Source of the DNA: Phyllobates terribilis
Taxonomy: Eukaryota
Length of the DNA: 64,000 nt
Reading direction: 5' to 3'
NCBI RefSeq assembly: GCF_046119375.1
Contig: NW_027362769.1
Span: 174,034,001-174,098,000, forward strand
The translations under genes were made by a program, and so were the position numbers. The stretch's first letter is position 1. Each line of letters opens with the position of its first letter. Below, in pieces: positions 7,501 through 60,830 of this stretch. A model generated the notes under the pieces. The model worked only from the letters and a program-made list of their open reading frames with translations. It was not told the DNA's origin and did not search any database.

Positions 7501-9350
7501 GGGCATTGAGGCCTTTAATACACTTTAGAAGGCCTTTTCCACCGCTGCAGTTTTGGTCCAGCCTGATGTCAATAGGCCTTTTGTGGTGGAAGTGGATGCC
7601 TCTGAGGCAGGGGTGGGAGCGGTGCTCTCCCAGGGTTCCACCACTCTAACACATTTGAGGACTTGTGAGCTTTTTTCTCGTAAATTCTGTCCTCCAGAGC
7701 TCAATTGTGATATTTTCAATTGTGAACTTCTTGCCATAAAGTTAGCTCTGGAAGAGTGGAGGCATCTCCTTGAGGGAGAAAAGCACCCATTCGTGGTGCT
7801 TACTGACCATAAGAATCTGTTTTTTTACAGAATGCTAAGATACTGAACTCGAGACAAACCCGATGGGCCTTTTTTTTTTACCAGATTCAATTTTTTCGAT
7901 CTCTTACCTCCCTGGGACCAAGAATGTTCGGGCAGATGCTCTCTCAGAGTCTTTGTCCTAGTGAGTCTGAAATTACGGAACTTGATTTAATTCTTTCTAG
8001 GGGCATTGTAGTCTCTTCTGTCAATGTGGGAGATGGGTAAGGCTCAGGGGATGGCTCCGTCCAGCACACCTCATGATAAATTATTAGTTCCGGTGCAGTT
8101 GCGGTTGGACTTACTCAGTGTCATGACTCGATCACAGCGGAACACGCAGGCATTAAGAGGGGACTTGTCACCTGTTGAGCAGAAAGTATTGGTGGCCGTC
8201 CTTGGTTGGGTAAGGATGTTGAAGCTTATGTTAAGACATGCGAGATCTGTGCCAGGAGCAAGGTGCCTGGCGTTGCCCCGGCTTGGAAACTTCTCCCTTT
8301 GCCAATTCCTGTAGGTCCTTAGTTACACATATCCATAGACTTCATTACGGATCTCCCTGCCTCCAAGGGTATGACTACGGTGTGGGTTATTGTGGACCGA
8401 TTTTCTAAACAATACCATTTGGTTCCTTTGGCTCAGTTGCCAAGTACGCAGGACTAAGTAGATTTTTTCCTTGTTCAGGTGGTAATATTACTTGGGGTTC
8501 CTATGAATATTGTCTCTGATCGCCGGTCCCAGTTTGTCTCCAGATTCTGGAGGGCTTTCTGTAAACGCCTCGGGTCGGAACTCTCGTTTTCATCAGCATA
8601 CCATCCACAAACTAATGGGCAAATGGAGCGAACCAACCAGTGTCTTGAGTCCTATCTAAGATGTTTTTGCTCCCATACTCAGCATGATTGGGGATCATAC
8701 TTAGCATTGGTAGAGTTCGCCCTAAACAATAGACAGCACGAGGGCTTGGGAATGTCTCCCTTCTTCTATAATCTAGGTCTCCTTGTTTTAATGGAAGGGA
8801 TGATGTCCTTACGGCGGTCTCTGCTACTATCCATCACATCTGGAAGGTTTGGAAGGAAGCCATGTCCATCTCAAGAAATCAGGGGAGAGCATGAAGAGGC
8901 AGGCTGATAAGGTTGCAAACTCAGAATGGGGGACAGAGTTTGGGTGTCTACTAAGAATTTCCAGATTAAGGTATCATCTCCTAAGCTCGTACCCAGGTTT
9001 ATAGGACCATTTCCCATTATCGAGGTTGTCAATAAAGTGGCTTTTCAGGTAGGCCTGCCTTCCTCTATGCAGGTTCCCAATGTTTTTCACAAGACATTAT
9101 TAAAGAAGGTGGTTACCCCACTTGTGACCCAGTATCCTACTCCTTCTAATCTGGTAGATAATACTGAGGAGGTTGAGATAGAATGTATTGTGGACTCTCG
9201 TAGAGTTTGGAACTCCATTCAGTATTTGATTCATTGGAAGGGATACGGTCCTGAGGAGAGGTCCTGGGTCTCGAGAGGTAATATACATGCCAATCGTCTC
9301 ATCACTGAGTTCCATAAGAGATTTCCAGACAAGGTGGGTGGTGAGAGACT
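4579..9350 (+). pseudogene. Disrupted gag-pol (gag, protease, RT, RNase H, integrase, chromodomain) of the chromovirus
   Basis: Domains in Gypsy order spread over many short ORFs (4751, 5177, 5867, 6030, 7553, 8479, 8926) with stops and frameshifts; RT is split by the 6287-7221 insertion. Confidence 0.9.
6287..7221. mobile_element. Solo LTR (935 bp) inserted in the chromovirus RT
   Basis: TG...CA termini; flanks ATTAT (6282-6286) and ATTCT (7222-7226) form a 5-bp TSD with one mismatch. Removing the insert restores the RT reading LKDHSLYVKKEK. Confidence 0.8.
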
Positions 9351-32669: not shown

Positions 32670-33088
32670 CCCTTTATGTCCCTTCTAGACAGTACGGGGA
32701 GCACTTGGTGAGAATTCCTCATGGGACGGGGGATTGTGGTGTATAATAAAAAAAAAATGACATTATGGTAATGTGAGATGGGAGAAAAAGCTATGTAAAT
32801 ACTTTTATGCCCAAAAGACCCCAAACGATTCTTCTGGGACTAGTAGATGTTACATTTATAAATTAATTAATTAATAAATATTAATATATATATGAAAAAT
32901 GTGTTTTGAAGTATAAAAAAAAACAAGCAAAATAAAGAAGAAAGAAAAAAGAATATAAACACAGATGAGTCTGCGGCGCGGCCATATGAGGGATATTTCT
33001 GCCTTCGTCATACACAGGATGGTGCGAGCGGCTGTAATGAAGAAGGAGATAAATGACCCCATTGCCCCAGAGAGGAGGCAGTACGGCA

Positions 33089-33167
33089 CTGGAGGGCGGC
33101 GGGAGCTGGAGGGCGGCGGGCGCTGGAGGGCGACGGGCGCTGGAGGGCGGCGGGCGTTGGAGGGCGG
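33089..33167. repeat. 17-bp GC-rich tandem repeat (CTGGAGGGCGGCGGGCG) x5 containing GC boxes
   Basis: Units at 33089, 33106, 33123, 33140, 33157; GGGCGG is present in four of them. Confidence 0.85.
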
Positions 33168-33445
33168 CTGCCATGTTCTCAATAACTTCAGCTTTTGCTG
33201 GAGAGATGATTTTCATTCACTCCAGCCGCGCCCCACAGACCCCCAATGCTACGCGACACAGAGACGCCATTCTGTACTGTATGTACACAGCTTTATCACT
33301 CATGACAATTGACAACAGTCAAAGATGGCGTGGGGAGGGATGCTGGTGGTAGTAGTGCCATGACAGCATGGTGGTGGTAGTGTGATAGCATTGGCAGTGA
33401 GATGATAATGGAGGGATGATGGTGGTAAAGACATTAGATGATGGC

Positions 33446-34023
33446 GTTGCTAAGGTAATAGTGTTGCTAGGGTGCTGATGTTATTAGGGTGATGATAGTG
33501 TGATAGCATTGCTAAGGTTACTAAGCTGATGGTCCTGGTAAGAGGATGGTGTTGCTAGGGTGATGGTGTTACTAGGAGCGTGGCATTGCTATGGTGATAA
33601 GGTTGATAAGGTGATGGTGTTGGTAGGAGCATGGTGTTCCTAGGGTGATGGTGCTGGTAGGGTGATGGCGTTGCTAGGGTGATGGTGCTGGTAGGGTGAT
33701 GGCGTTGCTAGGGTGATGGTGTTAGTAGGAGCATGGTGTTGCTAGGGTGATGGCATTGGTAGGAACATAATGTTGCTAGGGTGATGGCGTTGCTATGGTG
33801 ATAGCGTTAGTAGGAGCATGGTGTTGCCAGGGAGATGGTATTGCTAAGTTGATGGTGTTACTAGGGTGACGACATTAGCAAGAGCATAGTGTTACTAGGG
33901 TGATGGTGTTGCTACGGTGATAGTGTTGCTAGGATGATAGTGTTGCTAGGGTGATGGTGTTGCTAGGGTGATAGCCTTGCTAGGGTGATGGTGTTGCTAT
34001 GGTGATAGTGTTGCTAGGGTGAT
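33446..34023. repeat. 17-bp tandem repeat GGTGTTGCTAGGGTGAT; each unit resembles an RFX X-box
   Basis: 28 units in exact 17-bp register from 33551 to 34023, plus degenerate units from 33446. The repeat is certain; the regulatory role is inferred. Confidence 0.9.
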
Positions 34024-34437
34024 GGCGGTGGCGGTGGTAGCAGGATGGCGTCGTTGTGGGGCTGCTCCGCAGGATCTGGACTTCTGTTCTCTAGCACACT
34101 GTCCTAGTCTTTCTGCAGACTTTCATTGCAGGTTAACCCTTTGCAGTGCATGGAGTGAGATCAGCAGCTAATAGATCCGCAGCTTACTTCCAGCCTCATC
34201 ATATCCGCTGCCTTGATGTTCACTTCCTGCACGTTATCTGGTGCCGCAGCTCTGCCGCACTGTGAGGACAAATTACCCCACTCTGCGCAAAAGTCTAATC
34301 ATGGGCAGGAAGGGGTTAAAGCAAGAATGTTTCCATTGCAGTTCTGACTCTCACCATAAGATGGCGGCGCTGCACAGACACTGACAGACCCAGAGCATTG
34401 TGGATATGGAGACGGATCTGGTTGCCAAGGAGCGGAC

Positions 34438-34596
34438 GCAGCCGGAGTACAGGAGGCCCCCGCAGCCGGAGTACAGGAGGCCCCCGCAGCCGGAGTACAG
34501 GAGGCCCCCGCAGCCGGAGTACAGGAGGCCCCCGCAGCCGGAGTACAGGAGGCCCCCACAGCCGGAGTACAGGAGGCCCCCGCAGCCAGAGCAGAG
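34438..34596. repeat. 24-bp tandem repeat GCAGCCGGAGTACAGGAGGCCCCC, 6 full units plus a partial one
   Basis: Units at 34438, 34462, 34486, 34510, 34534, 34558, 34582. Confidence 0.92.
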
Positions 34597-34929
34597 GACA
34601 CCGCGGAGGTGAGGCTGTGTGCACACCAGGAGCAGCAGAGGTAAAGCTGCGCCATGTGCAACATATGGAGGAAAGTATGTGCCCCCTGTGCGGCCGCTCA
34701 TGTTCTCCCCCCATGTCTGTATGGAGCTTGTGCACCATCATGGGGGGCAGATAAGGGTCTTCCCCAAACTGTTCCCACAAAGCTGAAGCTACAATTGTCC
34801 TCAATGTCTTGTGTTAAAGATTAAGAATTGCCATCACTGGAGCTGATCCGCCATAGCACTATCCTCCTCCACCATCTGTACAGGGGCACAATGCAGTCAG
34901 GGGGTAACATCCTCCTGGAATCACCAAAC

Positions 34930-35280
34930 CTAGACCCCTCCATCAGACGCAGATAGAGAAGTGCGATCCGTCACTGCACAGAACACGTCTCCTCCAGTCC
35001 AGTGTTGGCGGCTTTACACCACTCCATCCGACGCTCAGCATTGTGCTTGGTGATGTACGGCTGCATGCAGCTGCTCGGCCATGAAGCTCCCGGCGGGGGC
35101 GCAGTGTTTGTGCTGATACCAGAGGAGGTCTGGACTCTGCAGTTATGGGGTAAGCAGAGCGGTGGGGACTTTTCTGCCTTCTGCTCCTCAGCACTCGGCC
35201 CCCCACTAATGTTACGGGGTCTCCACTTTGTGGCTGAGTTGCTGCGGTTCCTTCCACTTCTCAGTAATATCACTCACAGG
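34930..35280 (-). mobile_element. Highly decayed Tc1 transposase remnant
   Basis: Minus-strand translation QPYITKHNAERRMEWCKA resembles the Tc1 KP.I...NA.RRLEWCKA segment. Confidence 0.5.
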
Positions 35281-35416
35281 TGATGGGGGAAGAATCAGGA
35301 GGAAGAAATGTCATGGACGGACTGTCACCCCGGTGGCTCCTATTACAGGACCGTGCTGTATCAGGGAGCTCCGCACCACCGGCCGCTCTGTCACATGGTA
35401 GTAAAGGCGGCATGTC

Positions 35417-38011
35417 GGGGGGGGTGGATGTTATACACCGGGGGGGCGAGGGGCTGGATGTTATACATCGGGGGTGAGGGGCCAGATGTTATACACTGGG
35501 GGGCGAGGGGCTGGATGTTATACACCGGGGGTGAGGGGACAGATGTTATACACTGGGGGGTGAAGGGACAGATGTTATACACTGGGGGGTGAGGGGACAG
35601 ATGTTATACACTGGGGGGTGAGGGGACAGATGTTATACACTGGGGGGTGAGGGGACAGATGTTATACACAGGGGGGTGAGGGGACAGATGTTATACACAA
35701 GGGGGTGAGGGGAAAGATGTTATACACCGGAGGGTTAGGGGCCAGATGTTATACACTGGGGGCGAGGGGACAGATGTTATACACCGGGGGGGTTAGGGGC
35801 CGGATGTTATACACCAGGGGATAATAATGGGGCCGGAGGTTATACACTGGGGGGCGAGGGGACAGATGTTATACACCGGGGGGCAAGGGGACAGATGTTA
35901 TACACTGGGTGGTGAGGGGACAGATGTTATACACCGGGGGGGGGGGGTGAGGGGACAGACGTTATACACTGGGGGGTGAAGGGACAGATGTTATACACTG
36001 GGGGGTGAAGGGACAGATGTTATACACTGGGGGGTGAAGGGACAGATGTTATACACTGGGTGGTGAGGGGACAGATGTTATACACTGGGGGGTGAAGGGA
36101 CAGATGTTATATACCGGGGGGGTGAGGGGACAGATGTTATATACCGGGGGGGTGAGGGGACAGATGTTATACACCGGGGGGTGAGGGGACAGATGTTATA
36201 TACCGGGGGGGTGAGAGGACAGATGTTATACACTGGGGGGTGAAGGGACAGATGTTATACACTGGGGGGTGAAGGGACAGATGTTATACACTGGGTGGTG
36301 AGGGGACAGATGTTATACACCGGGGGGGTAGGGGCCGGATGTTATACACCAGGGGATAATAATGGGGCCGGAGGTTATACACTGGGGGGCGAGGGGACAG
36401 ATGTTATACACCGGGGGGCGAGGGGACAGATGTTATACACTGGGTGGTGAGGGGACAGATGTTATACACCGGGGGGGGGGGTGAGGGGACAGACGTTATA
36501 CACTGGGGGTGAAGGGACAGATGTTATACACTGGGGGGTGAAGGGACAGATGTTATATACCGGAGGGGTGAGGGGACAGATGTTATACACTGGGTGGTGA
36601 GGGGACAGATGTTATACACCGGGGGGGTGAGGGGACAGATGTTATACACTGGGGGGTGAAGGGACAGATGTTATATACCGGGGTGGTGAAGGGACAGATG
36701 TTATACACCGGGGGGTGAGGGGACAGATGTTATACACCGGGGGGGGTGAGGGGACAGATGTTATACACCGGGGGGGTGAGGGGACAGATGTTATACACTG
36801 GGGGGTGAAGGGACAGATGTTATACACTGGGTGGTGAGGGGACGGATGTTATGCACCAGGGGATAATAATGGGGCCGGAGGTTATACACTGGGGGGCGAG
36901 GGGACAGATGTTATACACCGGGGGGCGAGGGGACAGATGTTATACACTGGGTGGTGAGGGGACAGATGTTATACACCGGGGGGGGTGAGGGGACAGACGT
37001 TATACACTGGGGGTGAAGGGACAGATGTTATACACTGGGGGGTGAAGGGACAGATGTTATACACTGGGTGGTGAGGGGACAGATGTTGTACACCGGGGGG
37101 GTGAGGGGACAGATGTTATACACTGGGGGGTGAAGGGACAGATGTTATATACCGGGGGGGTGAGGGGACAGATGTTATATACCGGGGGGTGAGAGGACAG
37201 ATGTTATACACTGGGGGGGTGAAGGGACAGATGTTATACACTGGGTGGTGAGGGGACAGATGTTATATACCGGGGTGGGGTGAGGGGACAGATGTTATAC
37301 ACTGGGTGGTGAGGGGACAGATGTTATATACCGGGGGGTGAGAGGACAGATGTTATACACTGGGGGGGTGAAGGGACAGATGTTATACACCGGGGGGGTG
37401 AGGGGACAGATGTTATACACTGGGGGGTGAAGGGACAGATGTTATATACCGGGGGGGGTGAGGGGACAGATGTTATACACTGGGTGGTGAGGGGACAGAT
37501 GTTATACACCGGAGGGTTAGGGGCCGGATGTTATACACTGGGGGCGAGGGGACAGATGTTATACACCGGGGGGTTAGGGGCCGGATGTTATACACTGGGG
37601 GCGAGGGGAAAGATGTTATACACCGGAGGGTTAGGGGCCGGATGTTATACACTGGGGGTGAGGGGACAGATGTTATACACCGGGGGGTTAGGGGCCGGAT
37701 GTTATACACCAGGGGATAATAATGGGGCCGGAGGTTATACAGTGGGGGGCAAGGGGACAGATGTTATACACCGGGGGGCGAGGGGACAGATGTTATACAT
37801 TGGGGGGCGAGGGAACAGATGTTATACATTGGGGGGCGAGGGGACAGATGTTATACACTGGGAGTGAGGGGACATGTACACTGGGGGTGAGGGGACAGAT
37901 GTTATTCATCGGGGGGGCGAAGGGACAGATGTTATACACTGGAGGGCGAAGGGACAGATGTTATACACTGGAGGGGTGAGGGGCCGGATGTTACACACTG
38001 GGTGGTGAGGG
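35417..38011. repeat. G-rich ~29-30-bp minisatellite (GGGGGGTGAGGGGACAGATGTTATACACT), left part
   Basis: Directly visible; continues at 42603-44106 beyond the LTR element. Confidence 0.95.
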
Positions 38012-41000
38012 TGTTAAAAGGCTCGGATGCCGCACACAGCACGCAGAGAGTATGGCAGAGGTTTAATTCAAGATTTGGTTTCTCCACGCAGGGAGTGTAA
38101 ATTTAAGTAACACAACAATAAAACAGTAAAATCGGACAATAAACGATTGTGGTTTAACTATAACACGGAAAGGATGAACAATTCGGCACAGTCCCAAAAG
38201 TTCAGGCTGAATAAGAGAAGGTAGATTACTGGAGGCTTGCACTTATCTGTCCTTTAGCGATAACTACGTCCGTCTTCAGACACTCACTCCGGAGGGTGTC
38301 CGTCTTCTGGCGGCAGTGGGCGGTCTCGGGTCTCACCCACTGGGCCCCCAGTCCTTTTGACCACACGACAGCGGTCACGACTCCTTTAAGAGCCGCAGCA
38401 AGCTCCTCCGGCGTACAACAAACTGCGTTAGGATCACTAATCCGTAGGTCACCGTCAGATGTCTGGAAAACTGTGGTGATGCAGGTAACTAACGATCACT
38501 TTCTGTAGGCCCTGTTCAGACCGCACGCCCCTTGTTTTGCGGTAAGCTGTGTCACCCGTTCATCCGTCACCGCAGACAGGTCAGCACGTCTCTATTTCAC
38601 CGAGGACAGAGCAGCACGTCTCTCTCTCGTTGTCGGCAGGTCAGACTGTTTCTCCCCAACTGCCGGTCTGCTCTCCACAACCAACTGTCTCTTTCGCGCG
38701 AGCCCAGACACCTCATTTCCTCTCTTCCGTCCCTCTCCTCTCTCCCCTAGCACTGTCCAGGAAGTCCCCCGTGCACTCTTAATCCCATCCCCTGGCAACA
38801 CTGGGCAGGACCCTGGCAGTTCCGGCGCCGGAGCTCCGCACCTGTCCCTAGGCAAGTCTTCCTTTTTACACTCCCGCTCCCTTTGAGCTCGCCATTCCAC
38901 GGGCAAGAGTTTTTTCACCAGGCGCTCACACTCTCTGACCTCTTGGATGATACGTTGCCAGATGAACTGATCCTGATTGTAGCGGATAGGCGGCACACCA
39001 GCCGTGGATCATTCGGACCGGCTTAACGCAGTTGGAGCGCAGGGTACTTGAGAGTCGCTGGGGTTCCCAACTTCGCCCGGCCCAGACTGACGGAGCGGTG
39101 GGCCCTTCTCTCTCGTGTGGGAAGCTGTGGGCGATGTGAGACTGGGGATCGCAGCCACTATCATCTCTTCCAGGCGTTTCATGGTGCCTATGTTCCTTAA
39201 ACTTCTGCTGCACCAACCTCCGAAGAGTCTGCAACCGGTGCCGATGCTCCCGGACCCAGGTAGATGGGCCCGTCCGGGGCCAGTCCTCCACGGGATCTAG
39301 TTCGAGCTCGGTGATCTCCCTACCCTTTTGTCCGAACAGCAGGGTGTAGGGGGTGAATCCTGTGGCACTATGTACCCGGTTATTATAGACCCACACCAGC
39401 TCGGCCACAAACTCCGGCCATCGTACCTTCCAATATTCTTCCAAGGTTCGAAGCATCTGGATCAAAGTTCTGTTGAAGCGTTCACAGGACCCATTCCCTT
39501 GCGGATGGTAAGGGGTGGTCCTAGACTTCTCGATCTTGTATAGCCGGTGCAGCTCCTCCATCACCCGTCCTTGGAAACAAGCTCATTGATCGGAGTGAAT
39601 TCTCTTCGGACAGCCATAGACCCTGATGAAGTCCCGACAAATAGCCTGGGCAGCAGATTCAGCTGTCTTATCCCTGGTCGGAGTTACCACCGCAAATTTC
39701 GTGAAGTGGTCGGTCATGACCAGGCAATGTCCATACCCGAGATGCGCCGGCCCGATGGTCAGGTAGTCGATCATCAACACCTCTAAGGGCGCAGCCATCA
39801 AAATGGTCTGGACGGGGGCCCGCTGCTCTGGGGTTTTCACCAACTCACAACTCCGGCACTTCTGGCAGACGTTCTCCACTGCAACTCTTAGCTGGGGGTG
39901 GTACACCAGTCTGCAGCCACTGGAAGGTCTTCTCGGGTCCAAAGTGTGCTCCCCACTCGTGTGCTTCCTTGGCCAGTGTCCCGATCACACTCTGGAACCA
40001 CTACTTGCCATGTGGGGCCGAACTCCCGTACCACCTGGACCCGTCTGTACAACAAGCCGTCCTGCAGGCTCAGTCTCTCCCACTGCCGCAGCATCTTCAG
40101 CCCCTCTGGCGTCAGGGTCCCCCTTTCTTCACGGTTAGGGACTTGTTTCAAAGCCACCCACTGTCGCAACCGCGCAATCTCTCCATCCATTTGCTGTATC
40201 CGTACCCACTTGTCCCTGGGCCGCCCCAACACGTGTCCTTCTTTCACTTCCCCGATCTGTCCCGGCGTAGCGGACAACGGGCTGCCAACCCTCCGGAAGC
40301 TGGGCACCTCTTCGGCCTCCAGTTCTTCGTCTCGGTCACGGTCGGGGTCCTCATGGGTCACCCTGAAGAGGGCATCAGCATGCGTGTTTTCAGCCCTAGG
40401 CCGGTAGGTGATCTTATATCGGTACCGAGCCATGCGAGCCACCCATCGTTGTTCCAGGGCTCCCAACTTCACGTTCTCCAGATGAGCCGACGGGTTGTTG
40501 TCTGTCTTCACCAGCACTTCAGACCCCGACAAGTACTCCGCAAACTTTTCTGTCATTGCCCACACTAGGGCCAACAACTCCAGTTTAAAGGAGCTGTAAT
40601 TGTCTGGGTTCTTCTCCGAGTCTCGGAGGGAGCGACTCGCATATGCTATCACCCGCTCTCTCCCCTCCTGCTACTGCGACAGCACGGCCCCTAGACCAAG
40701 GAGACTTCCATCGGTGTGAAGAACGAAGGGCTGAGAAAAGTCCGCGTAGGCCAGTATGGGAGCTTCCATCAGGGCCATCTTCAAGGCCCTGAAGGCCTCC
40801 TGTTCTCTTCCCAATTTCACTGTTCGATTTTTCGAGCCCGCAGGTATCCCTTGAAGGAGCTCCAGTAGCGGATTAGCGATGCGCGTGAAATTTTTCACGA
40901 ATCTGCAGTAATACCCTGCGAGTCCTAGGAAGGCCCGCACGTCCTTTACAGTCTTCGGGGTGTGCCACTCTTCTCGCATTTCTTGGATCTCCCGCCGCAT

Positions 41001-42602
41001 CTCTCGGGCCTATTCTGGTTCGGCCGTGGGCGACGGGGGCACTGCATTGCCCCGCACCATCCCTGCCAGGCTCACTACCCCTATCTCCTGTTCCCTCACG
41101 CGGGCCTCTGCCCCGCCTCCAGAAATGTCATACGCGGGTTGGTGCGCAAGCGCTCTCGCAAGGCCTGTCTTAGCTGCGCATCTCTGAGGCTACAAACTGG
41201 TCCCGAAGTACTAGGTCCGGGGGCCCCACTCCCACGTCTTCTAGGTTCGTTTTCCTAGTGATGTAAGTGTACGCACTCTGTAGGGCGTTGACATATTGGG
41301 TCACAGTCTCCCCCTCCCTTTGTGCCTGTTGGAACAGTCGCATCCTTAACTCTGCCACATTAGTAGGGTCCCCATGCATTTCTTCTAGGATCCGTACCAC
41401 CTTTTCCACTGTATTTTGGTCAGTGGGGGAACGAAACATTACTGACATTACTAGCTTCTCCTTCTAAAGCCAGCAAAGCTATCTCTGCTTGCATATCGGG
41501 GGTCATTGGGTGCATCCGTAACATGCTCTTAACCCGTTCTACCCAATCCCACAGCATCATGTTGTCTCCGGTAAACTTTGGGAGATTATTCAACATGGCG
41601 CCCAGGGGCAGGCTAGCTGTAGGGGCTCTTGCGCTGGCCTGTTCTGCCATGCCTGCAACTGCGTCTGGGGACGACATCCTGCCGACTACGCCAAATGTTA
41701 CAAGGCTCGGATGCCGCACACAGCACGCAGAGAGTATGGCAGAGGTTTAATTCAAGATTTGGTTTCTCCACGCAGGGAGTGTAAATTTAAGTAACACAAC
41801 AATAAAACAGTAAAATCGGGCAATAAACGATTGTGGTTTAACTATAACACGGAAAGGATGAACAATACGGCTCAGTCCCAAAAGTTCAGGCTGAATAAGA
41901 GAAGGTTGATTACTGGAGGCTTACACTTATCTGTCCTTTAGCGATAACTACGTCCGTCTTCAGACACTCACTCCGGAGGGTGTCCGTCTTCTGGCGGCAG
42001 TGGGCGGTCTCGGGTCTCACCCACTGGGCCCCCAGTCCTTTTGACCACACGACAGCGGTCACAATTCCTTTAAGAGCCGCAGCAAGCTCCTCCGACGTAC
42101 AACAAACTGCGTTAGGATCACTAATCCCGGGTGCGTCCTCACCCGTAGGTCACCGTCAGATGTCTGGAAAACTGTGGTGATGCAGGTAACTGAACGATCA
42201 CTTTCTGTAGGCCCGGTACAGACCGCACGCCCCTTGTTTTGCGGCAAGCTGTGTCACCCGTTCATCCGTCACCGCAGACAGGTCAGCACGTCTCTATTTC
42301 ACCGAGGACAGGGCAGCACGTCTCTATTTCACCGAGGACAGGGCAGCACGTCTCTCTCTCGTTGTCGGCAGGTCAGACTGTTTCACCCCAACTGCCGGTC
42401 TGCTCTCCACAACCAACTGTCTCTTTCGCGCGAGCCCAGACACCTGACTTCCTCTCTTCCGTCCCTCTCCTCTGTCCCCCAGCACTGTCCAGGAAGTCCC
42501 CCGTGCACTCTTAATCCCGTTCCCTGGCAACACTGGGCAGGACCCTGGCAGTTCCGGCGCCGGAGCTCCGCACCTGTCCCTAGGCAAGTCTTCCTTCTTA
42601 CA
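38012..42602 (-). mobile_element. Internally deleted Ty3/Gypsy LTR retrotransposon inserted in the minisatellite
   Basis: LTRs at 38012-38870 and 41696-42602 (TGT...ACA, highly similar); tRNA-Ser PBS at 41676-41693; PPT about 38871-38885. Gag fragment (LPKFTG), RT thumb/RNase H (VRAFLGLAGYY, TDGSLLGLGAVLSQ, IAYASRSL, YSSFKLELLAL), integrase (VLMIDYL, IHSDQ, GNGSCERFNRTL). No protease or RT palm seen. Confidence 0.93.
41676..41693 (-). other. Primer-binding site complementary to the 3' 18 nt of tRNA-Ser
   Basis: The plus strand reads ATCCTGCCGACTACGCCA, the 3' end of vertebrate tRNA-Ser including CCA, 2 nt from the 5' LTR. Confidence 0.88.
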
Positions 42603-44106
42603 CTGGGACAGATGTTATACACTGGGGGTGAGGGGACAGATGTTATACACTGGGGGTGAGGGGACAGATGTTATACACTGGTTGGTGAGGGGACAGATGT
42701 TATACACCGGGGGGTGAAGGGACAGATATTATACACCAGGGGGGTGAGAGGACAGATGTTATACACAGGGGGGGTGAAGGGACATATGTTATACACTGGG
42801 GGGTGAGGGGACAGATGTTATACACTGGGGGGTGAGGGGACAGATGTTATACACCGGGGGGTGAGGGGACAGATGTTATACACCGGGGGGTGAGGGGACA
42901 GATGTTATACACTGGGGGGTGAAGGGACAGATGTTATACACTGGGGGGTGAAGGGACAGATGTTATACACTGGGGGGTGAAGGGACAGATGTTATACACC
43001 GGAGGGTGAAGGGACAGATGTTATACACTGGGAGGGTGAGGGGCCGGATGTTATACACCGGGGGGTGAGGGGACAGATGTTATACACCGGGGGGTGAGGG
43101 GACAGATGTTATACACCGGGGGGTTAGGGGCCGGATGTTATACACCAGGGAATAATAATGGGGCTGGATGTTATACACTGGGGGGGGCGAGGGGCCAGAT
43201 GTTATACACCGGGGGATTAGGGGCCGGATGTTATACACCAGGGGATAATAATGGGGCGGGATGTTATACACTGGGGGGTGAGGGGCCAAATGTTATACAC
43301 TAGGGGGTGAGGGGACAGATGTTATACATTGGGGGGTGAGGGGCCGGATGTTATACACCGGGTGATAATAATGGGGCCAGATGTTATACACTGGGGGGTG
43401 AGGGGAAAGATGTTATACACTGGGGGCGAGGAGCCAGATGTTATACACTACGGGGTGAGGGGACAGATGTTATACACTGGGGGGTGAAGGGACAGATGTT
43501 ATACACTGGGAGGGTGAGGGGACAGATGTTATACACCGGGGGGTGAGGGGACAGATGTTATTCACTGGGAGGGTGAGGGGACAGATGTTATTCACTGGGA
43601 GGGTGAGGGGACAGATGTTATACACCGGGGGGTGAGGGGACAGATGTTATACACTGGGGGGTGAGGGGACAGATGTTATTCGCCGGGGGGTTAGGGGCCG
43701 GATGTTATACACCAGGGGATAATAATGGGGCCGGATGTTATACACTGGGGGGGGTGAGGGGACAGATGTTATACACTGGGGGGTGAGGGGACAGATGTTA
43801 TACATTGGGGGGGGGGTGAGGGGCCGGATGTTATGCACCAGGGGATAATATTGGGGCCGGATATTATACATTGGGGGGTGAGGGGACAGATGTTATACAC
43901 TGTGGGGTGAGGGGAAAGATGTTATACATTGGGGGGTGAGGGGCCGGATGTTATACACCGGGGGATAATAATGGGGCCGGATGTTATACACTGGGGGGTG
44001 AGGGGAAAGATGTTATACATTGGGGGGTGAGGGGCCGGATGTTATACATTGGGGGGTGAGGGGCCGGATGTTATACACCGGGGGATAATAATGGGGCCAG
44101 ATGTTT
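42603..44106. repeat. G-rich ~29-30-bp minisatellite, right part
   Basis: Same unit and orientation as 35417-38011. Confidence 0.95.
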
Positions 44107-44878
44107 TACTCTTAAGGAGAATTTCCCATAATGATCACAGTCAGCGTGGCACCATACACAGTACTGGTCAGAGTTCCCCTATAAGCAGTGTCATCATTTT
44201 CTCCTCTTGCCCCGTATACAGTATTAGGGTAGTTTCACACGACCCGATGTCTCCACATTTGTTAAAACCGGTCTGATTATTCTGACCAGACTGATCAGAG
44301 CGTCATCAGTTTTTCTCAGACGTGGAAAGAGAAAAATAAGCGTCTCCACCGTCTCCATTCTGTCAGATGACATCCGAATGCCGTCCGATTCTTTTCACGG
44401 CCCCGTACATTTGCATCGCTGATTTTGATCCAACACTCTTATCAAAATTGGACAGATCTTCGATTTTTCTCCACGACCCTCTTGGTCCGAGTAAAATGTT
44501 GGTCATGTACACAACCCCATAGAATATCATAGGTACGAGTGCTACGAGTGAGAACCATGGAGGGCACTCGTATGAGAAAAATCGGTGGTGTGATCGCGCC
44601 CCAAGTCAGAGCTTCCACGACAGCCACGGTTCACACGTCTGCTCTGGTGTCAGCAGAGATTATCCCGTTACCCCTCCAGTATAAGAGACGACTGCTGTTT
44701 TCACTACTGGGGGCTCGTGTTGTCTCTTTTTATAGGAGACCCCCAGATATTGTAAGGAGGGAGAGGTGTGACGCCGTACCTCCCTAGTCCATACTTATCT
44801 ATCAGATGGCACGCCGTCAGGCCGCAGACCCTTCTATGTTCCTATGTAAGTGGTGCCGTTATCTCTCAGGTCTCACCC

Positions 44879-47800
44879 ATGATGGCGTCCGGCGGCAGCA
44901 CAACCAAGGTAGAGATTTCTGAGCCTCTGAAGCCTCTGCGTGCGAATGCGGAGGCCGTGGAGTTCATGTCCAGCGTGGGTGAGTGCATCCTGAGATCCCC
45001 CCAGCTGTCACCGGACTACAACTCCCAACATGCCCCATAGATTGATGGTATGTATGTTTCTCCAGGGCTGGATGAGCTGCGCCTCTGTCTGTTTTCCGAG
45101 TCTTTACAGTCCTCGGCTGAGCTCGGCTCCTTCTCCGTCAGTGTCCAGTCCACTTACTACGAGCAGGACGGACGGGAGGATGAGAAGTGTTTCCTCGTCC
45201 ACATCAGCAGCCACAACTCAGTGGACGACGTTCCCTGCGGAAGCTCCATCACCGGTAAGTGCAGAACACACGCACATATTGATCCACAAGGCCGAGTTAT
45301 CGTATATATTTGCACATTTCTTCCCGTAGATTTATGACTTTTTTTATTTTTGCAGCTTATATCTCTCTACAGCTGGAAACGCTGGAGCAGCAGCAGCACG
45401 AGTTTATCAAGGTACCGCACCATCAATAATGCATTATTGGGACCAAAAATAAGATCACAACCCAGCGAAACACATTCATTATCGATCGCGTAATAATGGA
45501 AACCATAAGTGTGAACAGAGCCTTAACGCCTTCTCATCCTGATCTGTAGTTTTCACATTGATTCCCTTAAGTGGCAGAGATGTAAATGTTCAGTGCTGGA
45601 GTGGAGTTGAGCCGGCACCATGAAGAGCAGCTGTAACGTCCGGCTGCAGTGACCAGGATCACAGATAACTTCTATCTATTCTATAAATTCTGTAGTTTAA
45701 TACCAAAGTATTAAATACAGTAAAACGTTTAAAAAAAAAAAGTTTTTAAAAATATGAAAAAAAAGTTCAATTTACCCCCTTTTTGCCCCATTAAAAATAA
45801 AACAATAAAAAAAATATTTGGTATCGCTGCGTTCGTAAAAGTCTGATATATCAAAATATTAAATAAATTTATCCGGTAACCTATGTAACGAAAAAAAATC
45901 AAAACACCAGAATTACATTTTTGGGCCTAAACAACATTGCAATAAGAGGCATCCAAATGGTATCAATAAAAACGTCAGCTCAAAAAATAAGCCGTCACCC
46001 AGATCCTGAGAAATGAAAATCATACGGGTCTCGGCGATAAAAGCTAATTACAAATTTGCACATTTTTTTTCACCACTTAAATAAAAAAAATATATATATA
46101 TACATGTTTGGTATCTGCGAACTGGAACTGAGCTGGGGAATCATATTACCAGGTCAGTTTTACCATATAATGAACAAGTAAAATAAAGAAAACCCATAAA
46201 AAAAAATTGTGGAATTGCACTTTTTTTTTTTGCAATTTCACCGCACTTGGAATGTCTTTACCGTTTTCCAGTACACGATATGGTAGAATGAATGGTGTCA
46301 TTCAAAAGTACAACTCGTCCTGCAAAAAAATAAGCCCTCGTACGGCCATGTTGACGGAAAAATAAAAAAACTTATGGCTTTTGGAAGAGGGGGAGGAAAA
46401 AAAATAGAAAACAGAAAATCGCCCAGTGGGTGAAGGAATTAAAAAGCCAAAAAAAAAGTGAAATTTTGGTATTTTTTTTCTACCTCTGCCTCTTTTGTAG
46501 CCTCTTTTGTGAATGCAAAAAGTGAGGAACAAATAAAAGGAGTGTGGCTGCAAAGTTGGTTTGCTGTCTGTAGATGCATAGACCCGCATAAGAGCTGTAT
46601 ACACAAAACGATAGATTTTTTATGACTCTATACCGCCATCGTCCAGTGCTCCCAATAGACCGTTTTCTCTCCATTTTTCAGCTGACAGGACATTCACTGG
46701 ATAAGAAAACTGACATGAAGAGACGCGGTGACCAGATGGTGATCAGCAGAGTCATCACCGAGGGTCAGGTGAGTGCGGAGGAGTCGCCCCCTCACTATGT
46801 GCACCCCTATAGGGGCCATTCCTTTATAGGTTAGGATATATTCACATGATATGGGTAATTTATAGTTTTGACACATTTTTTACTTTTTGATTTTCATACG
46901 CTGCAAAAAAATGTTAATATTCTGTGGGAAAAATTACGGCAACGGAATCCGAAAACTATTGTTTCCCCTAGAAATACTTTCAAAAAGGGGATGTCAGTAC
47001 AGCAAACTTATATAACGGAAGAGTCACCCCTATCACGACCCCTTAGTCAAATATAGCTTTGGGCATCATCCATTATATCCTGGGTTTTTTAGGACAACAG
47101 CATCCAGTAATCGTTAGGTTTAGGCCAGGTACATGCGGATGCAACATCATCAATGCCTGTCACCCTCCAGATACAGAAGTGAGCAACACCGGACAACCCC
47201 TTTAACAACCCTTTGGTACAATAATAAGAGCTTTAAGCTTCCCTCCGCAGCAAGCCCGCCAGGAATCAAAGTCCTACAATTTGAGTTCGCTGACTGGGTT
47301 CATCTCAGAGGCCTCGAACCTGCTGATCATGCGGCTTCTTGCAAGGAGGAAAACCCCAAAAATCCTGGATTTTCTGACCTTGGATGCGGAGATGAACCTG
47401 TGCGTCTCGTCCTATGTAAGTTGTGTGACACAAGCTGTAACTGTCTCATTGTCCTGCGGAGCTTTATAGCGTACCGTATGTGGTTTGTGTTTTACAGCGA
47501 GAGCTCGGCTCCCGTCCTCAGATCATCGGGAAAAACTCCGTAGAAGTTTATGGCATAGAGCGATCGATTCACTCAGACGATCTGCCCATCACCTGGCAGT
47601 GCTGCTTCCTACCCGACGGGTAACAGATATCGGATCAATTGTATTATTTATTTTTTATTTCTGTAAGGGCTTGTTCAGACGAGTGTGTATTCGGTCTGTG
47701 CGCTGTTAGTGTGTGCCACAAACCGCGTACGGACCCATTATACGTGACAGTACACATGGACGATCATAGAAAAAACTGCAGCAAGCACTACTCCTAGTCC

Positions 47801-49999
47801 ACAATGCAGACTGGCACACGGAGCTGCACACAGAGCCAGTCATGTCTGCAATATGTGGATGTGACTGGTGCGTTTTCCAACACCCGTCCTAAGACCCCAT
47901 TCACACGTCCGTGTTTCTCAGAAAAGCAGCTAAACTTTTTACGATCCTTCACACTCTCAATCCATTTCAAGATAGATGGGTCCAAGTAACAACTAGAGCA
48001 AGGGATGAGACGCATGCAAAACTTTATAATTTTTATAAAAGTTTTCAAGTTATCCTTTATAATCTATAGGCATGTACAGATGTCCATTTGTTGATCCGGT
48101 CACAAACTCCCACTCACACAACGCACAATTTTCAGGGCGCGCTCCGTCACCCGCAGCTTTCTCATTACTCTGTTTTCTCATTCTTTTTTTTTTATATTCA
48201 CTTGTCGATGAATAATAATTCTGTATTTATTCGTCTGTATTATTATGCGTCCGGTGATGGTAGCTGAACCCGGCTCTTGGCTGGTGCTAGTTGTATTATT
48301 GAGTACATACTGTATATCCCACCTCGCTGGTGCTGATTTTATTAGTGTCCCATGTCGCCATCAGTTCATTCTTACCTTTACTTGGTTACAGACATATGAC
48401 GAGTCGCATCCAGGTCGGATCTCCTGTTACCCTGAGAATCACACAGATGCCGGTCCTCTCAGAGCCAGGTATTAAGAGATCTTCACGGCCGGAAAGTCAG
48501 CGAGTTAATCCTTTTATCAAGAGATGTGCGAACCTTAGGGGATGTGCACACGTTATGTATTTGGTGCAGAAATTTCTGCATCTCTAGGCCAGAAGACGCA
48601 TCGTAAAATATGCTCGTTTTTGATGCTTTTTTCCCCACTTATTATTATGGGTGAAATCTGCAGCAAAAGAATTTAAGTCTGCTCCAAATCTGCACGTCAA
48701 AAATAAGCAACGTATGCATTAGACTTCAGGATTCTCATTCATTTTTGCTGGCACCATGAAACCCTTTCAGGTTGTGTGACAACACTACGCGGAAAAAAAA
48801 CGTGCCAGAAACGCAATGTGTGCACACAGCCTAAAGGAACCTTTGCCTGATACAAAAGTGGCTGCACTAAACAGCAAAGTATCAGGTCTGGGTTATGAAT
48901 TTGTACAGGCTACAAATGACAGAAGTAAACGGCATACGACAGACCCCCATTGACTATTATGGGGTCTATTGGGTTTCTGTTATGGGGTCTATCATTTTCC
49001 TGACGAAGGCGGTAACGCAGATGTGAACAGCGCCTTAATTTTACTGCCACCTAAGTCATCTGAACTGTGCCTTGTGGCTTTAAAGTTAGGCAAAGTTGTA
49101 ATATTTTGACTCCGCCACTTTGTAGAAAACAACGACTTGATGCTCTCAAATCTGTTCGCAGACGAAGAAGATCCCAAACCAGTGTTTGTAAAGAAGCCCC
49201 TAATCTGGGAGGAGGACGCTCAGCTGTACTCGCAGTTCCTGGAGAGAAAGGTGCGCAGACGTGGGACTGCTGAGGGACGTTCCCATCTCAGCCATTCGAG
49301 GCTTACATGGAAATACCTAGAATCCGCTGAGTAGATTGTCCTAGGACAAACGTTGTTTCCGTAACTCCTGTTCACTTCTTTAGTAATTGTGGTAAACTCC
49401 ACCATTTTCATAATCCTAGCGGTCACATGTAGATTAAAATGAGAATACCCCCTTTAACTGCCGGAGAACTACAAAGCTCAGCATGCAATGTAAGCCAGAA
49501 ACTGGCCACAGAGAGCTGAGATTTGTAGGTTTTTTTGTCACGTTAGTTTTTTTTTTTTTTGCATGGATGACTGTATGATTTTGGGCTGCGAACTTTACCA
49601 GATGGAGGCTAAAAGTGCCTCCTTTTCAGCCTCCATCTGTACGCTGTGCGGCTGCTTACTGTTACCTGCACTTCCCTGTACAGAGGGGCCACCGCAAGAA
49701 AACATGCAATATATTGTTTCTGTAATGTTTCCTCATGGTGGACCACTGCCCCATTCCTCCAGCATTGCTTGTACTTTCCACAGGAAGAACTAATGTCCGA
49801 TCACGAGACGTACCTGCGACGACATCCAGAGATGAAGACTCTCCTTGGGGACTTCATGCAGTTCTTACTCCTCAGGAAGCCGGAGGACGTTGTTACTTTT
49901 GCAGCAGAGTATTTTGGGCCGTTCTCCTCGGCACAGGAGCGCGGCGAAACTTTCCAATCCTCCACAATCTCTAGTCCATTTCAAGAAGGGTCCAAGTAA
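44879..49999 (+). CDS. CATIP: Ciliogenesis-associated TTC17-interacting protein (C2orf62), 9 coding exons, 366 aa from the ATG at 44879
   Basis: Exons 44879-44978 (acceptor before 44870), 45066-45254, 45356-45411, 46682-46768, 47251-47415, 47498-47619, 48392-48468, 49162-49250, 49784-49999. All GT-AG, phases consistent, 1101 nt. Peptides ANAEAVEFMSS, GFISEASNLL, RIQVGSP, KKPLIWEED and YLRRHPE..DFMQFLLLRKPEDVVTFAAEYFGPF align by recall to human CATIP. The true first exon and start codon are uncertain. Confidence 0.92.
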
Positions 50000-60700: not shown

Positions 60701-60830
60701 ACCCGGGTAACAGCGAGAGCTCAGCTGTCTGTGAGGAAACCCGGGACAGACTTGTTATATACAGCATAGGATATATATATTATACCAGACATACCAGGGC
60801 AGACATGTAATAATATCTGTAATATCATAC

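What the first reader, a model, noticed from the sequence alone, without database searches (positions are those of the whole stretch)
33446..34023. Tandem array of RFX X-box motifs immediately upstream of the probable CATIP promoter
Seen: 28 units in exact 17-bp register with no indels (33551-34023). About 18 units (including two upstream at 33446 and 33463) carry GTTRCY, and about 15 carry a full 14-bp element such as GTTGCTAGGGTGAT or GTTGCTATGGTGAT. On the other strand these read ATCACC-CT/AT-AGCAAC, and the unit at 33857 (GTCACC-CT-AGTAAC) fits the consensus GTNRCC-N0-3-RGYAAC exactly; CCTAGCAAC is the classic X1 core. The array ends ~180 bp before a CpG-rich unique segment with splice donors (34200-34640), the best candidate for CATIP's first exon, which has another GTTGCCAAGG at 34421. 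Established: RFX factors control ciliary genes through proximal X-boxes, and CATIP is a ciliogenesis gene. Inference: a minisatellite acting as a multivalent, copy-number-variable RFX promoter element, or as an RFX sink.
Basis: partly seen in the sequence, partly recalled or inferred. Interest (0 to 1): 0.75.

Follow-up and report, generated by a model that had tools for sequence, protein, structure and literature searches.

The report
RFX-motif minisatellite upstream of frog CATIP
A 17-base tandem repeat whose units look like binding sites for the cilia regulator RFX sits just upstream of the first exon of the cilia gene CATIP in the golden poison frog. It is missing from two related frogs, and nothing yet shows that the animal uses it.

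Summary
TRF finds a 17-bp array at 33439-34025 (34 copies). 28 units lie in exact register; 1 is an exact match and 14 are one-mismatch matches to GTNRCC-N0-3-RGYAAC.

I first doubted it, because CATIP coding starts at 44879. A frog transcript contig and the Ranitomeya RefSeq protein then showed that 34386-34640 is a non-coding first exon, spliced 34640|44870. The window is Phyllobates terribilis.

That exon carries a conserved X-box at 34421. Its orthologue is an exact X-box in Eleutherodactylus coqui. Mouse Catip is RFX2-bound and RFX2-dependent. So this is an RFX-type promoter, and the array lies 360-950 bp upstream of the mapped transcript 5' end.

Function is not shown:
- The array is absent from Engystomops and E. 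coqui.
- 10 of 28 units have a broken half-site.
- Motif positions are no better conserved than the other positions.
- A quarter of the window is tandem repeats.
- About 0.3-0.5% of random 17-mer units would be equally X-box-like.

The same scan has flagged other X-box-like minisatellites in this genome.

Verdict: a real, lineage-specific minisatellite able to bind RFX. It is most likely neutral or a modest add-on to the promoter.

The parts
33439..34026 (+). 17-bp G-rich minisatellite, about 34 units. Consensus GTTGCTAGGGTGATGGT. Two interspersed unit types: A with GGGTGAT, which is X-box-like, and B with GGAGCAT, which is not.
   Evidence: TRF; register listing; unit matrix; 24 copies within 3 mismatches, all inside the array. 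G 233 versus C 52; CpG 8 versus TpG 99.
33857..33870 (-). The only unit that matches GTNRCC-N2-RGYAAC exactly.
   Evidence: Consensus scan.
33891..34026 (+). The eight units nearest the promoter. They are the most uniform part of the array (0-2 differences from consensus). Seven of the eight keep GTTRCT.
   Evidence: Per-unit distances.
34386..34640 (+). CATIP exon 1, non-coding. The 5' end is approximate: it is the point where homology with the transcript contig begins. Donor at 34640|34641.
   Evidence: L002 nt 4-76 aligns to 34386-34458 at 78%, E 4e-11, collinear with all downstream exons. E. coqui 7716-7772 is 85% identical. The R. imitator RefSeq N-terminus equals the translation of 34617-34640 plus 44870 onward.
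34421..34433 (+). Conserved proximal X-box (site 2). The left half GTTGCC is perfect. The right half has 2 mismatches in this species.
   Evidence: Four-frog alignment: GTNRCC is kept in all four and varies only at the N and R positions. The orthologue in E. coqui is an exact X-box and the only hit in 5 kb.
34400..34413 (+). Decayed upstream X-box-like site (site 1). It begins GTTGCTAT in the Logan transcript and in Engystomops, GTGGATAT here, and carries a 3-nt deletion in E. coqui.
   Evidence: Alignment.
34437..34598 (+). Young 24-bp array (6.8 copies, 96% matches) inside exon 1. It lengthens an upstream ORF. The other frogs have a single copy.
   Evidence: TRF; ORF 34400-34612; alignments.
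34641..44869 (+). CATIP intron 1, 10.2 kb. It holds 29-bp minisatellites and an LTR retroelement. The same intron is about 2.2 kb in Engystomops and E. coqui.
   Evidence: Splice mapping; TRF; retroelement ORFs.
44870..44978 (+). CATIP exon 2, carrying the start codon at 44879.
   Evidence: Translation. It is identical to the N-terminus of P. terribilis XP_073503498.1 (P0158). All hyloid CATIP proteins start here.
45066..49999 (+). The remaining CATIP coding exons: about 45066-45251, 45355-45411, 46680-46768, 47248-47415, 47500-47619, 48391-48468, 49159-49251 and 49782-49999.
   Evidence: Transcript mapping; P0158 exons are 98.6-100% identical where aligned exon by exon; Pfam CATIP_N and RIIa hits.

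Best explanation
This is a lineage-specific, G-rich 17-bp minisatellite. It grew by slippage or unequal exchange in the 0.36-0.95 kb upstream of the mapped 5' end of the non-coding first exon of CATIP in Phyllobates terribilis. About half of its units are near-consensus RFX sites, with a perfect AGCAAC half-site (CCTAGCAAC) and a weak second half. That build resembles validated X-boxes such as the DYX1C1 one. The promoter itself is of the RFX type: a conserved X-box sits at the 5' end of exon 1 (34421). The array is an evolutionary add-on. Its motif content is most likely incidental and not maintained by selection. RFX dimers could still occupy it whenever the promoter is open, in testis or multiciliated cells. 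In that case it would add at most a modest, copy-number-dependent contribution. Shown here: the array, its motif content, the exon structure, the conserved X-box, and the array's absence in two other frogs. Inferred: neutrality, and opportunistic binding.
For: The array and its motif counts are confirmed. Exon 1 and its splice junction are established. The conserved X-box at 34421 is an exact X-box in E. coqui. No 17-bp array lies upstream of the orthologous exon in Engystomops. E. coqui has unrelated 25-bp arrays there instead, and neither of those upstream regions has any X-box hit at one mismatch or fewer apart from the conserved site. 10 of 28 units have a broken half-site. Mean information content is 1.41 bits at the half-site positions and 1.38 elsewhere. 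CpG 8 versus TpG 99 points to germline methylation and CpG decay. Tandem arrays make up 25% of the window, and a random 17-mer unit reaches one mismatch or fewer with probability 0.003-0.005. So many such arrays are expected genome-wide. The scan noted two other X-box-like minisatellites in this genome (not checked here).
Against: The other 10 minisatellite families in the window are all 2 or more mismatches from an X-box. Only this one is X-box-like, and it sits at an RFX-type promoter. The eight units nearest the promoter are the most uniform and keep the motif. In this species the ancestral proximal sites are weakened: site 1 is lost and the right half of site 2 has 2 mismatches. That pattern would fit compensation by the array. 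The units match the consensus at least as well as the EMSA-validated DYX1C1 X-box.
Confidence: 0.5

Rival explanations
1. The array is a working homotypic cluster of RFX sites. RFX2 or RFX3 occupy many units in spermatids or multiciliated cells and raise, or buffer, CATIP transcription in proportion to copy number.
For: There are 15 sites at one mismatch or fewer, 360-950 bp upstream of the mapped transcript 5' end. The promoter is RFX-type. Mouse Catip is a direct RFX2 target. X. laevis C2orf62 is in the multiciliated-cell gene list. The units share GTTGCTAGGG or GTTGCTATGG with validated X-boxes. The conserved proximal sites are weakened in this species.
Against: There are no binding, chromatin or expression data for this frog. 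The array is not conserved in two other hyloid frogs. The motif positions show no extra constraint. CpG decay suggests the array is methylated in the germline. RFX sites that drive promoters usually lie very close to the start site.
Confidence: 0.3
2. The array was seeded from the promoter's own X-box sequence. A duplicated copy of the site 1 / site 2 core expanded, so its RFX likeness is inherited rather than accidental.
For: The exon-1 core of the Logan transcript aligns to 1.5 array units with local score 15, reached by 0 of 1000 dinucleotide shuffles. Ancestral site 1 and site 2 share the pattern GTTGCYAWGG with the unit.
Against: Unrelated human X-box probes also score 12 against the array (14 and 51 of 1000 shuffles). 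The window's own core and the E. coqui core score only 10, which is not significant. The flanks of the array share nothing significant with the core. The orthologous core is still in place, unexpanded, about 360 bp downstream.
Confidence: 0.1
3. The true start site lies further upstream, so the array is inside an intron or a transcribed leader rather than in the promoter.
For: The Engystomops GenBank models place an extra exon (L001 6790-6858, with a good GTAAGT donor) about 850 bp upstream of the X-box exon. Sequences resembling splice acceptors precede 34386. A second Logan contig carries a different 5' exon on the same acceptor.
Against: That extra exon has no detectable homologue in 31.5-34.7 kb of the window. 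The longest transcript contig ends at the equivalent of 34383-34386. The evidence behind the Engystomops models is unknown.
Confidence: 0.15
4. The array works through something other than RFX, for example KLF-type CACCC boxes, which occur once per type-A unit on the minus strand, or the DNA structure of the G-rich strand.
For: GGGTG (CACCC on the other strand) occurs 16 times in the array and ATGGCG 4 times. The G/C strand skew is strong.
Against: These cores are short and common: GGGTG occurs 161 times on the plus strand of the rest of the window. GGG runs are 14 nt apart, too far for a canonical quadruplex (read directly from the sequence).
Confidence: 0.05

Closest known systems
Single proximal X-boxes of ciliary gene promoters (DAF-19 targets in C. 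elegans; human DYX1C1 and DCDC2; mouse RFX2 targets including Catip)
   Same: The same motif class. The array units share their first 10 nt with the validated DYX1C1 and DCDC2 X-boxes. The gene is a known direct RFX2 target in mouse. A conserved single X-box is also present here at 34421.
   Different: Known functional X-boxes are single or paired, conserved, and within about 100-250 bp of the start site. The array has about 15 copies, lies 360-950 bp upstream, and is not conserved in two other frogs.
Promoter VNTRs and microsatellites whose units are transcription-factor sites (for example the INS VNTR, the PIG3 pentanucleotide p53 element, GGAA repeats bound by EWS-FLI1). Cited from my own knowledge.
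   Same: A tandem array next to a promoter, in which each unit carries a factor's motif. Copy number could tune output.
   Different: In those cases binding and copy-number effects were measured. Here nothing is measured. I found no paper describing an RFX-site minisatellite.
MHC class II X1 box (RFX5-type half-site). Cited from my own knowledge.
   Same: The core CCTAGCAAC is identical: one strong half-site and a weak partner.
   Different: The X1 box works with the X2 and Y boxes and the RFX5/RFXAP/RFXANK complex. The array has no such partner boxes.
Other motif-bearing minisatellites noted by this scan in the same genome (X-box-like arrays s1-211424 and s1-209225; CTCF-motif array s1-230093)
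   Same: The same genome and the same kind of object: a minisatellite whose unit resembles a factor's site, next to or inside a gene.
   Different: Those windows were not readable here, so I could not test whether the units are related.

Membership tests
RFX X-box cis-element | Matches the imperfect palindrome GTNRCC-N0-3-RGYAAC | tested here: met
   1 exact and 14 one-mismatch sites in the array. The consensus unit is 1 mismatch away, and only 0.3-0.5% of random units do as well. No curated RFX weight matrix was available, so the match is to the consensus only.
RFX X-box cis-element | Lies close to the start site of the regulated gene | tested here: inconclusive
   The array spans -947 to -360 relative to the point where homology with a frog CATIP transcript begins. 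The start site is not mapped in this species, and an upstream exon cannot be excluded.
RFX X-box cis-element | Conserved in orthologous promoters | tested here: not met
   Engystomops and E. coqui have no such array and no extra X-box hits upstream of the orthologous exon. By contrast, the single site at 34421 is conserved in four frogs.
RFX X-box cis-element | Occupied by RFX proteins, with gene expression dependent on RFX | not testable with these tools
   Only indirect evidence exists: mouse Gm216 (Catip) is RFX2 ChIP-positive and down 2.43 log2 in Rfx2-/- testis, and X. laevis C2orf62 is in a multiciliated-cell gene list.
Minisatellite / VNTR | Head-to-tail copies of a 10-100 bp unit at a single locus | tested here: met
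   TRF: period 17, 34.4 copies. No copy occurs elsewhere in the window. No terminal inverted repeats suggest a transposon.
Minisatellite / VNTR | Copy number varies between individuals | not testable with these tools
Promoter VNTR acting as a transcription-factor site array | Factor occupancy, and expression that depends on copy number | not testable with these tools
   There are no ChIP, ATAC or reporter data for this species.

The most novel reading that the evidence does not exclude
Binding-site turnover through a minisatellite. In the poison-frog lineage an X-box-bearing 17-mer expanded into a homotypic RFX cluster with variable copy number. That cluster now carries much of CATIP's RFX input, while the ancestral proximal X-boxes decay: site 1 is lost and site 2 is reduced to a half-site. 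Together with the other X-box-like arrays noted in this genome, this would make minisatellite expansion a recurrent route for rewiring ciliary promoters.
Probability: 0.12. Interest if true: 0.65.

Novelty: new member of a known kind. Interest (0 to 1): 0.4.

Why it matters
If RFX binds the array and output scales with unit number, this would be a natural, copy-number-variable dosage control on a cilia and sperm gene. It would also be a clear case of regulatory-site turnover by repeat expansion, testable in Xenopus embryos with simple reporters. If the array is neutral, the locus is a useful caution. In a genome where a quarter of the sequence can be tandem repeats, arrays that look like good binding sites will fall next to matching promoters by chance. 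Either way, the work defines CATIP's distal non-coding first exon and its conserved X-box in hyloid frogs.

Tried and rejected
(1) My first reading was that the promoter link was wrong, because CATIP coding starts at 44879 and CpG observed/expected is higher at 44-46 kb than at 34-35 kb. Transcript and RefSeq evidence overturned this.

I used only local alignment and translation.

(3) Dendrobatid genomic DNA (D. tinctorius, R. imitator), and also Hyla sarda and Pelobates fuscus: the loci were found, but no DNA was returned because the files are too large.

(4) A search for partial N-terminal CATIP products, meant to recover poison-frog transcript contigs, found nothing.

(5) Transposon origin: no inverted repeats and no other copy of 32.6-35.4 kb in the window.

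(6) Selection on the motif within the array: none visible.

(7) Descent of the array from the promoter core: the significant score for one species is largely what any X-box gives.

(8) An 11-mer shared between window 33073 and the start of the Engystomops exon has E 0.06. I treated it as chance.

(9) The 5' 92 nt of the second transcript contig (L003) match nothing in the window or in the other loci.

(10) I found no paper linking CATIP or C2orf62 with RFX in its main text, and none on RFX-site minisatellites. The Xenopus RFX2 paper's held supplements do not list the gene.

Exons were checked one by one against proteins that the tools returned.

Full report
**Observation.** TRF reports an array at 33439-34025: period 17, 34.4 copies, 68% matches.
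- Cutting the sequence every 17 bp from 33551 gives 28 units with no indel.
- The consensus unit GTTGCTAGGGTGATGGT has 24 copies within three mismatches, against 0.16 expected, and all of them lie inside the array.
- Against GTNRCC-N0-3-RGYAAC, the unit at 33857 matches exactly on the minus strand.
- Fourteen further sites differ at one position, nearly always an A in place of the first G. Each such site has a perfect AGCAAC half and a weaker ATCACC half.

**Anatomy of the array.** Two unit types are interspersed. Type A carries GGGTGAT and is X-box-like. Type B carries GGAGCAT, usually with G at unit position 5, and is not.
- Ten of the 28 in-register units have a broken GTTRCY half-site.
- Mean information content is 1.41 bits at the six half-site positions and 1.38 bits at the other eleven, so there is no sign of extra constraint on the motif.
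- The plus strand is strongly G-rich (G 233, C 52).
- There are 8 CpG against 99 TpG. The CpGs sit at the unit junction in the GGC|G variants, which looks like CpG decay.
- The eight units nearest the promoter (33891-34026) are the most uniform.
- No inverted repeats flank the region, and nothing in 32.6-35.4 kb recurs elsewhere in the window.

**Species and gene.** Pfam CATIP_N hits the ORF at 45050-45337.
- A profile-free search with that exon, followed by a word search with a full-length orthologue, returned many frog CATIP proteins.
- The P. terribilis RefSeq protein XP_073503498.1 (P0158) is 98.6-100% identical to the window wherever it aligns exon by exon. The window is therefore from the golden poison frog.
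- Coding starts at 44879, and all hyloid CATIP proteins start there.
- CYP27A1-like exons lie upstream at about 21-25.7 kb.
- BCS1L lies tail-to-tail downstream, as it does in Ranitomeya.

**Is 34.2-34.64 kb the first exon?** I first thought not. Coding starts 10.9 kb away, an LTR element and large minisatellites lie in between, and CpG observed/expected is higher at 44-46 kb than at 34-35 kb. Two independent lines overturned that view.
- Transcript evidence: a 1252-nt transcript contig from a public frog RNA run (L002) carries the full CATIP coding sequence. It maps collinearly on the window. Nucleotides 4-76 align to 34386-34458 (78%, E 4e-11), nucleotides 124-233 to 44867-44979, and the rest to every downstream exon.
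- RefSeq evidence: the Ranitomeya imitator RefSeq protein begins MCTPGTAEVSH, followed by MMPSG. The window reads VCTPGAAE at 34617-34640 and VSPMMASGG from 44870.
- Together these fix the junction at 34640|44870. Exon 1 is non-coding here; the ORF inside it stops at 34610.
- The same exon lies 2.2 kb upstream of the ATG exon in Engystomops and in E. coqui. Intron 1 has therefore grown to 10.2 kb in this frog.

**The promoter is of the RFX type.** In a four-frog alignment the 5' end of exon 1 is the conserved block.
- At window 34421 every species keeps GTNRCC, with changes only at the N and R positions.
- In E. coqui the site reads as an exact X-box (GTTGCC-A-AGCAAC), the only hit in 5 kb. 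In P. terribilis the right half has two mismatches.
- A second site 21 bp upstream begins GTTGCTAT in the transcript species and in Engystomops. It has decayed in P. terribilis and in E. coqui.
- Mouse Gm216 (Catip) is RFX2 ChIP-positive and falls 2.43 log2 in Rfx2-/- testis (PMC4498915, S1 Table).
- X. laevis C2orf62 is in the multiciliated-cell gene list of PMC5245798.
- RFX sites normally lie very near start sites.

**Motif quality.** The EMSA- and reporter-tested human X-boxes of DYX1C1 and DCDC2 read GTTGCTAGGG and GTTGCTATGG over their first ten bases (PMC5024701). These are identical to the two commonest array variants. No curated weight matrix was available, so this comparison is with the consensus and with validated sites only.

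**Is the array more than chance, and is it used?**
- A random 17-mer unit comes within one mismatch of the consensus with probability 0.003-0.005. The other ten minisatellite families in the window are all at least two mismatches away. This array is therefore unusual.
- However, 25% of the window is tandem arrays. As a rough inference, a genome built like this should hold thousands of X-box-like arrays, and several should fall next to RFX-type promoters by chance.
- The scan has already noted two other X-box-like minisatellites in this genome. I could not examine them.
- The array is absent upstream of the orthologous exon in Engystomops. E. coqui has unrelated 25-bp arrays there instead.
- Descent of the unit from the promoter's own X-box is not supported beyond what any X-box would give.

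**Limits.**
- The start site is therefore inferred by homology only.
- The Engystomops GenBank models include a further upstream exon, which has no homologue in the window.
- A second transcript contig carries a different 5' exon on the same acceptor. Alternative or more distal start sites therefore remain possible.
- Poison-frog genomic DNA could not be fetched.
N runs in L004 were left as they are.

**Verdict.** The functional claim is plausible but unproven. My estimates are about 50% that the array is a neutral by-product, about 30% that it contributes measurably as an RFX site cluster, and about 12% for the stronger reading in which binding sites turn over through repeat expansion.

Noticed in passing
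window 34437-34598: A young 24-bp array (6.8 copies, 96% matches) lies inside CATIP's non-coding exon 1. It stretches an upstream ORF to 70 codons (from GTG; 68 from its ATG) with a repeated eight-residue peptide. The other frogs have one copy. The uORF's ATG is kept in three of the four frogs.
   Followed up: partly
window 33085-33168: A second array of the same 17-bp period, but CpG-rich (4.9 copies, 91% matches), lies 270 bp upstream of the X-box-like array. By eye its unit resembles a version of the main unit before CpG decay. The relation is unresolved.
   Followed up: partly
window 38000-42400: An LTR retroelement sits on the minus strand inside CATIP intron 1. It has integrase and reverse-transcriptase ORFs at about 38.6-41.7 kb and direct repeats near 38.1-38.6 and 41.7-42.4 kb. 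It is bracketed by two blocks of the same 29-bp minisatellite (35427-38011 and 42605-44109).
   Followed up: no
window 9587 and 60698: Two exact palindromic X-boxes lie elsewhere in the window. One is inside a retroelement ORF. The other is 130 bp before the 35-bp satellite that starts at 60830.
   Followed up: no
window 34358-34369: AAGATGGCGGCG, which I recognise from my own knowledge as a YY1-type core, lies about 20 bp upstream of the point where transcript homology begins. It aligns with a similar stretch in E. coqui.
   Followed up: no
L001 134-1909 and 9932-11707: The Engystomops contig carries the CATIP 5' exons twice, 9.8 kb apart. This is either a real tandem duplication or an assembly artefact.
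   Followed up: no
L003 1-92: A second frog CATIP transcript contig has a different 92-nt 5' exon joined to the same acceptor. It has no match in the window or in the other loci.
   Followed up: partly
whole window: About 25% of the 64 kb is tandem arrays from about a dozen families, with periods of 17 to 86 bp.
   Followed up: partly
L005 9933 and 8147: In Nanorana parkeri an X-box-like site (1 mismatch) lies 68 bp upstream of the CATIP start codon, and an exact X-box lies 1.85 kb upstream. No homologue of the hyloid exon 1 was found within 10 kb.
   Followed up: no
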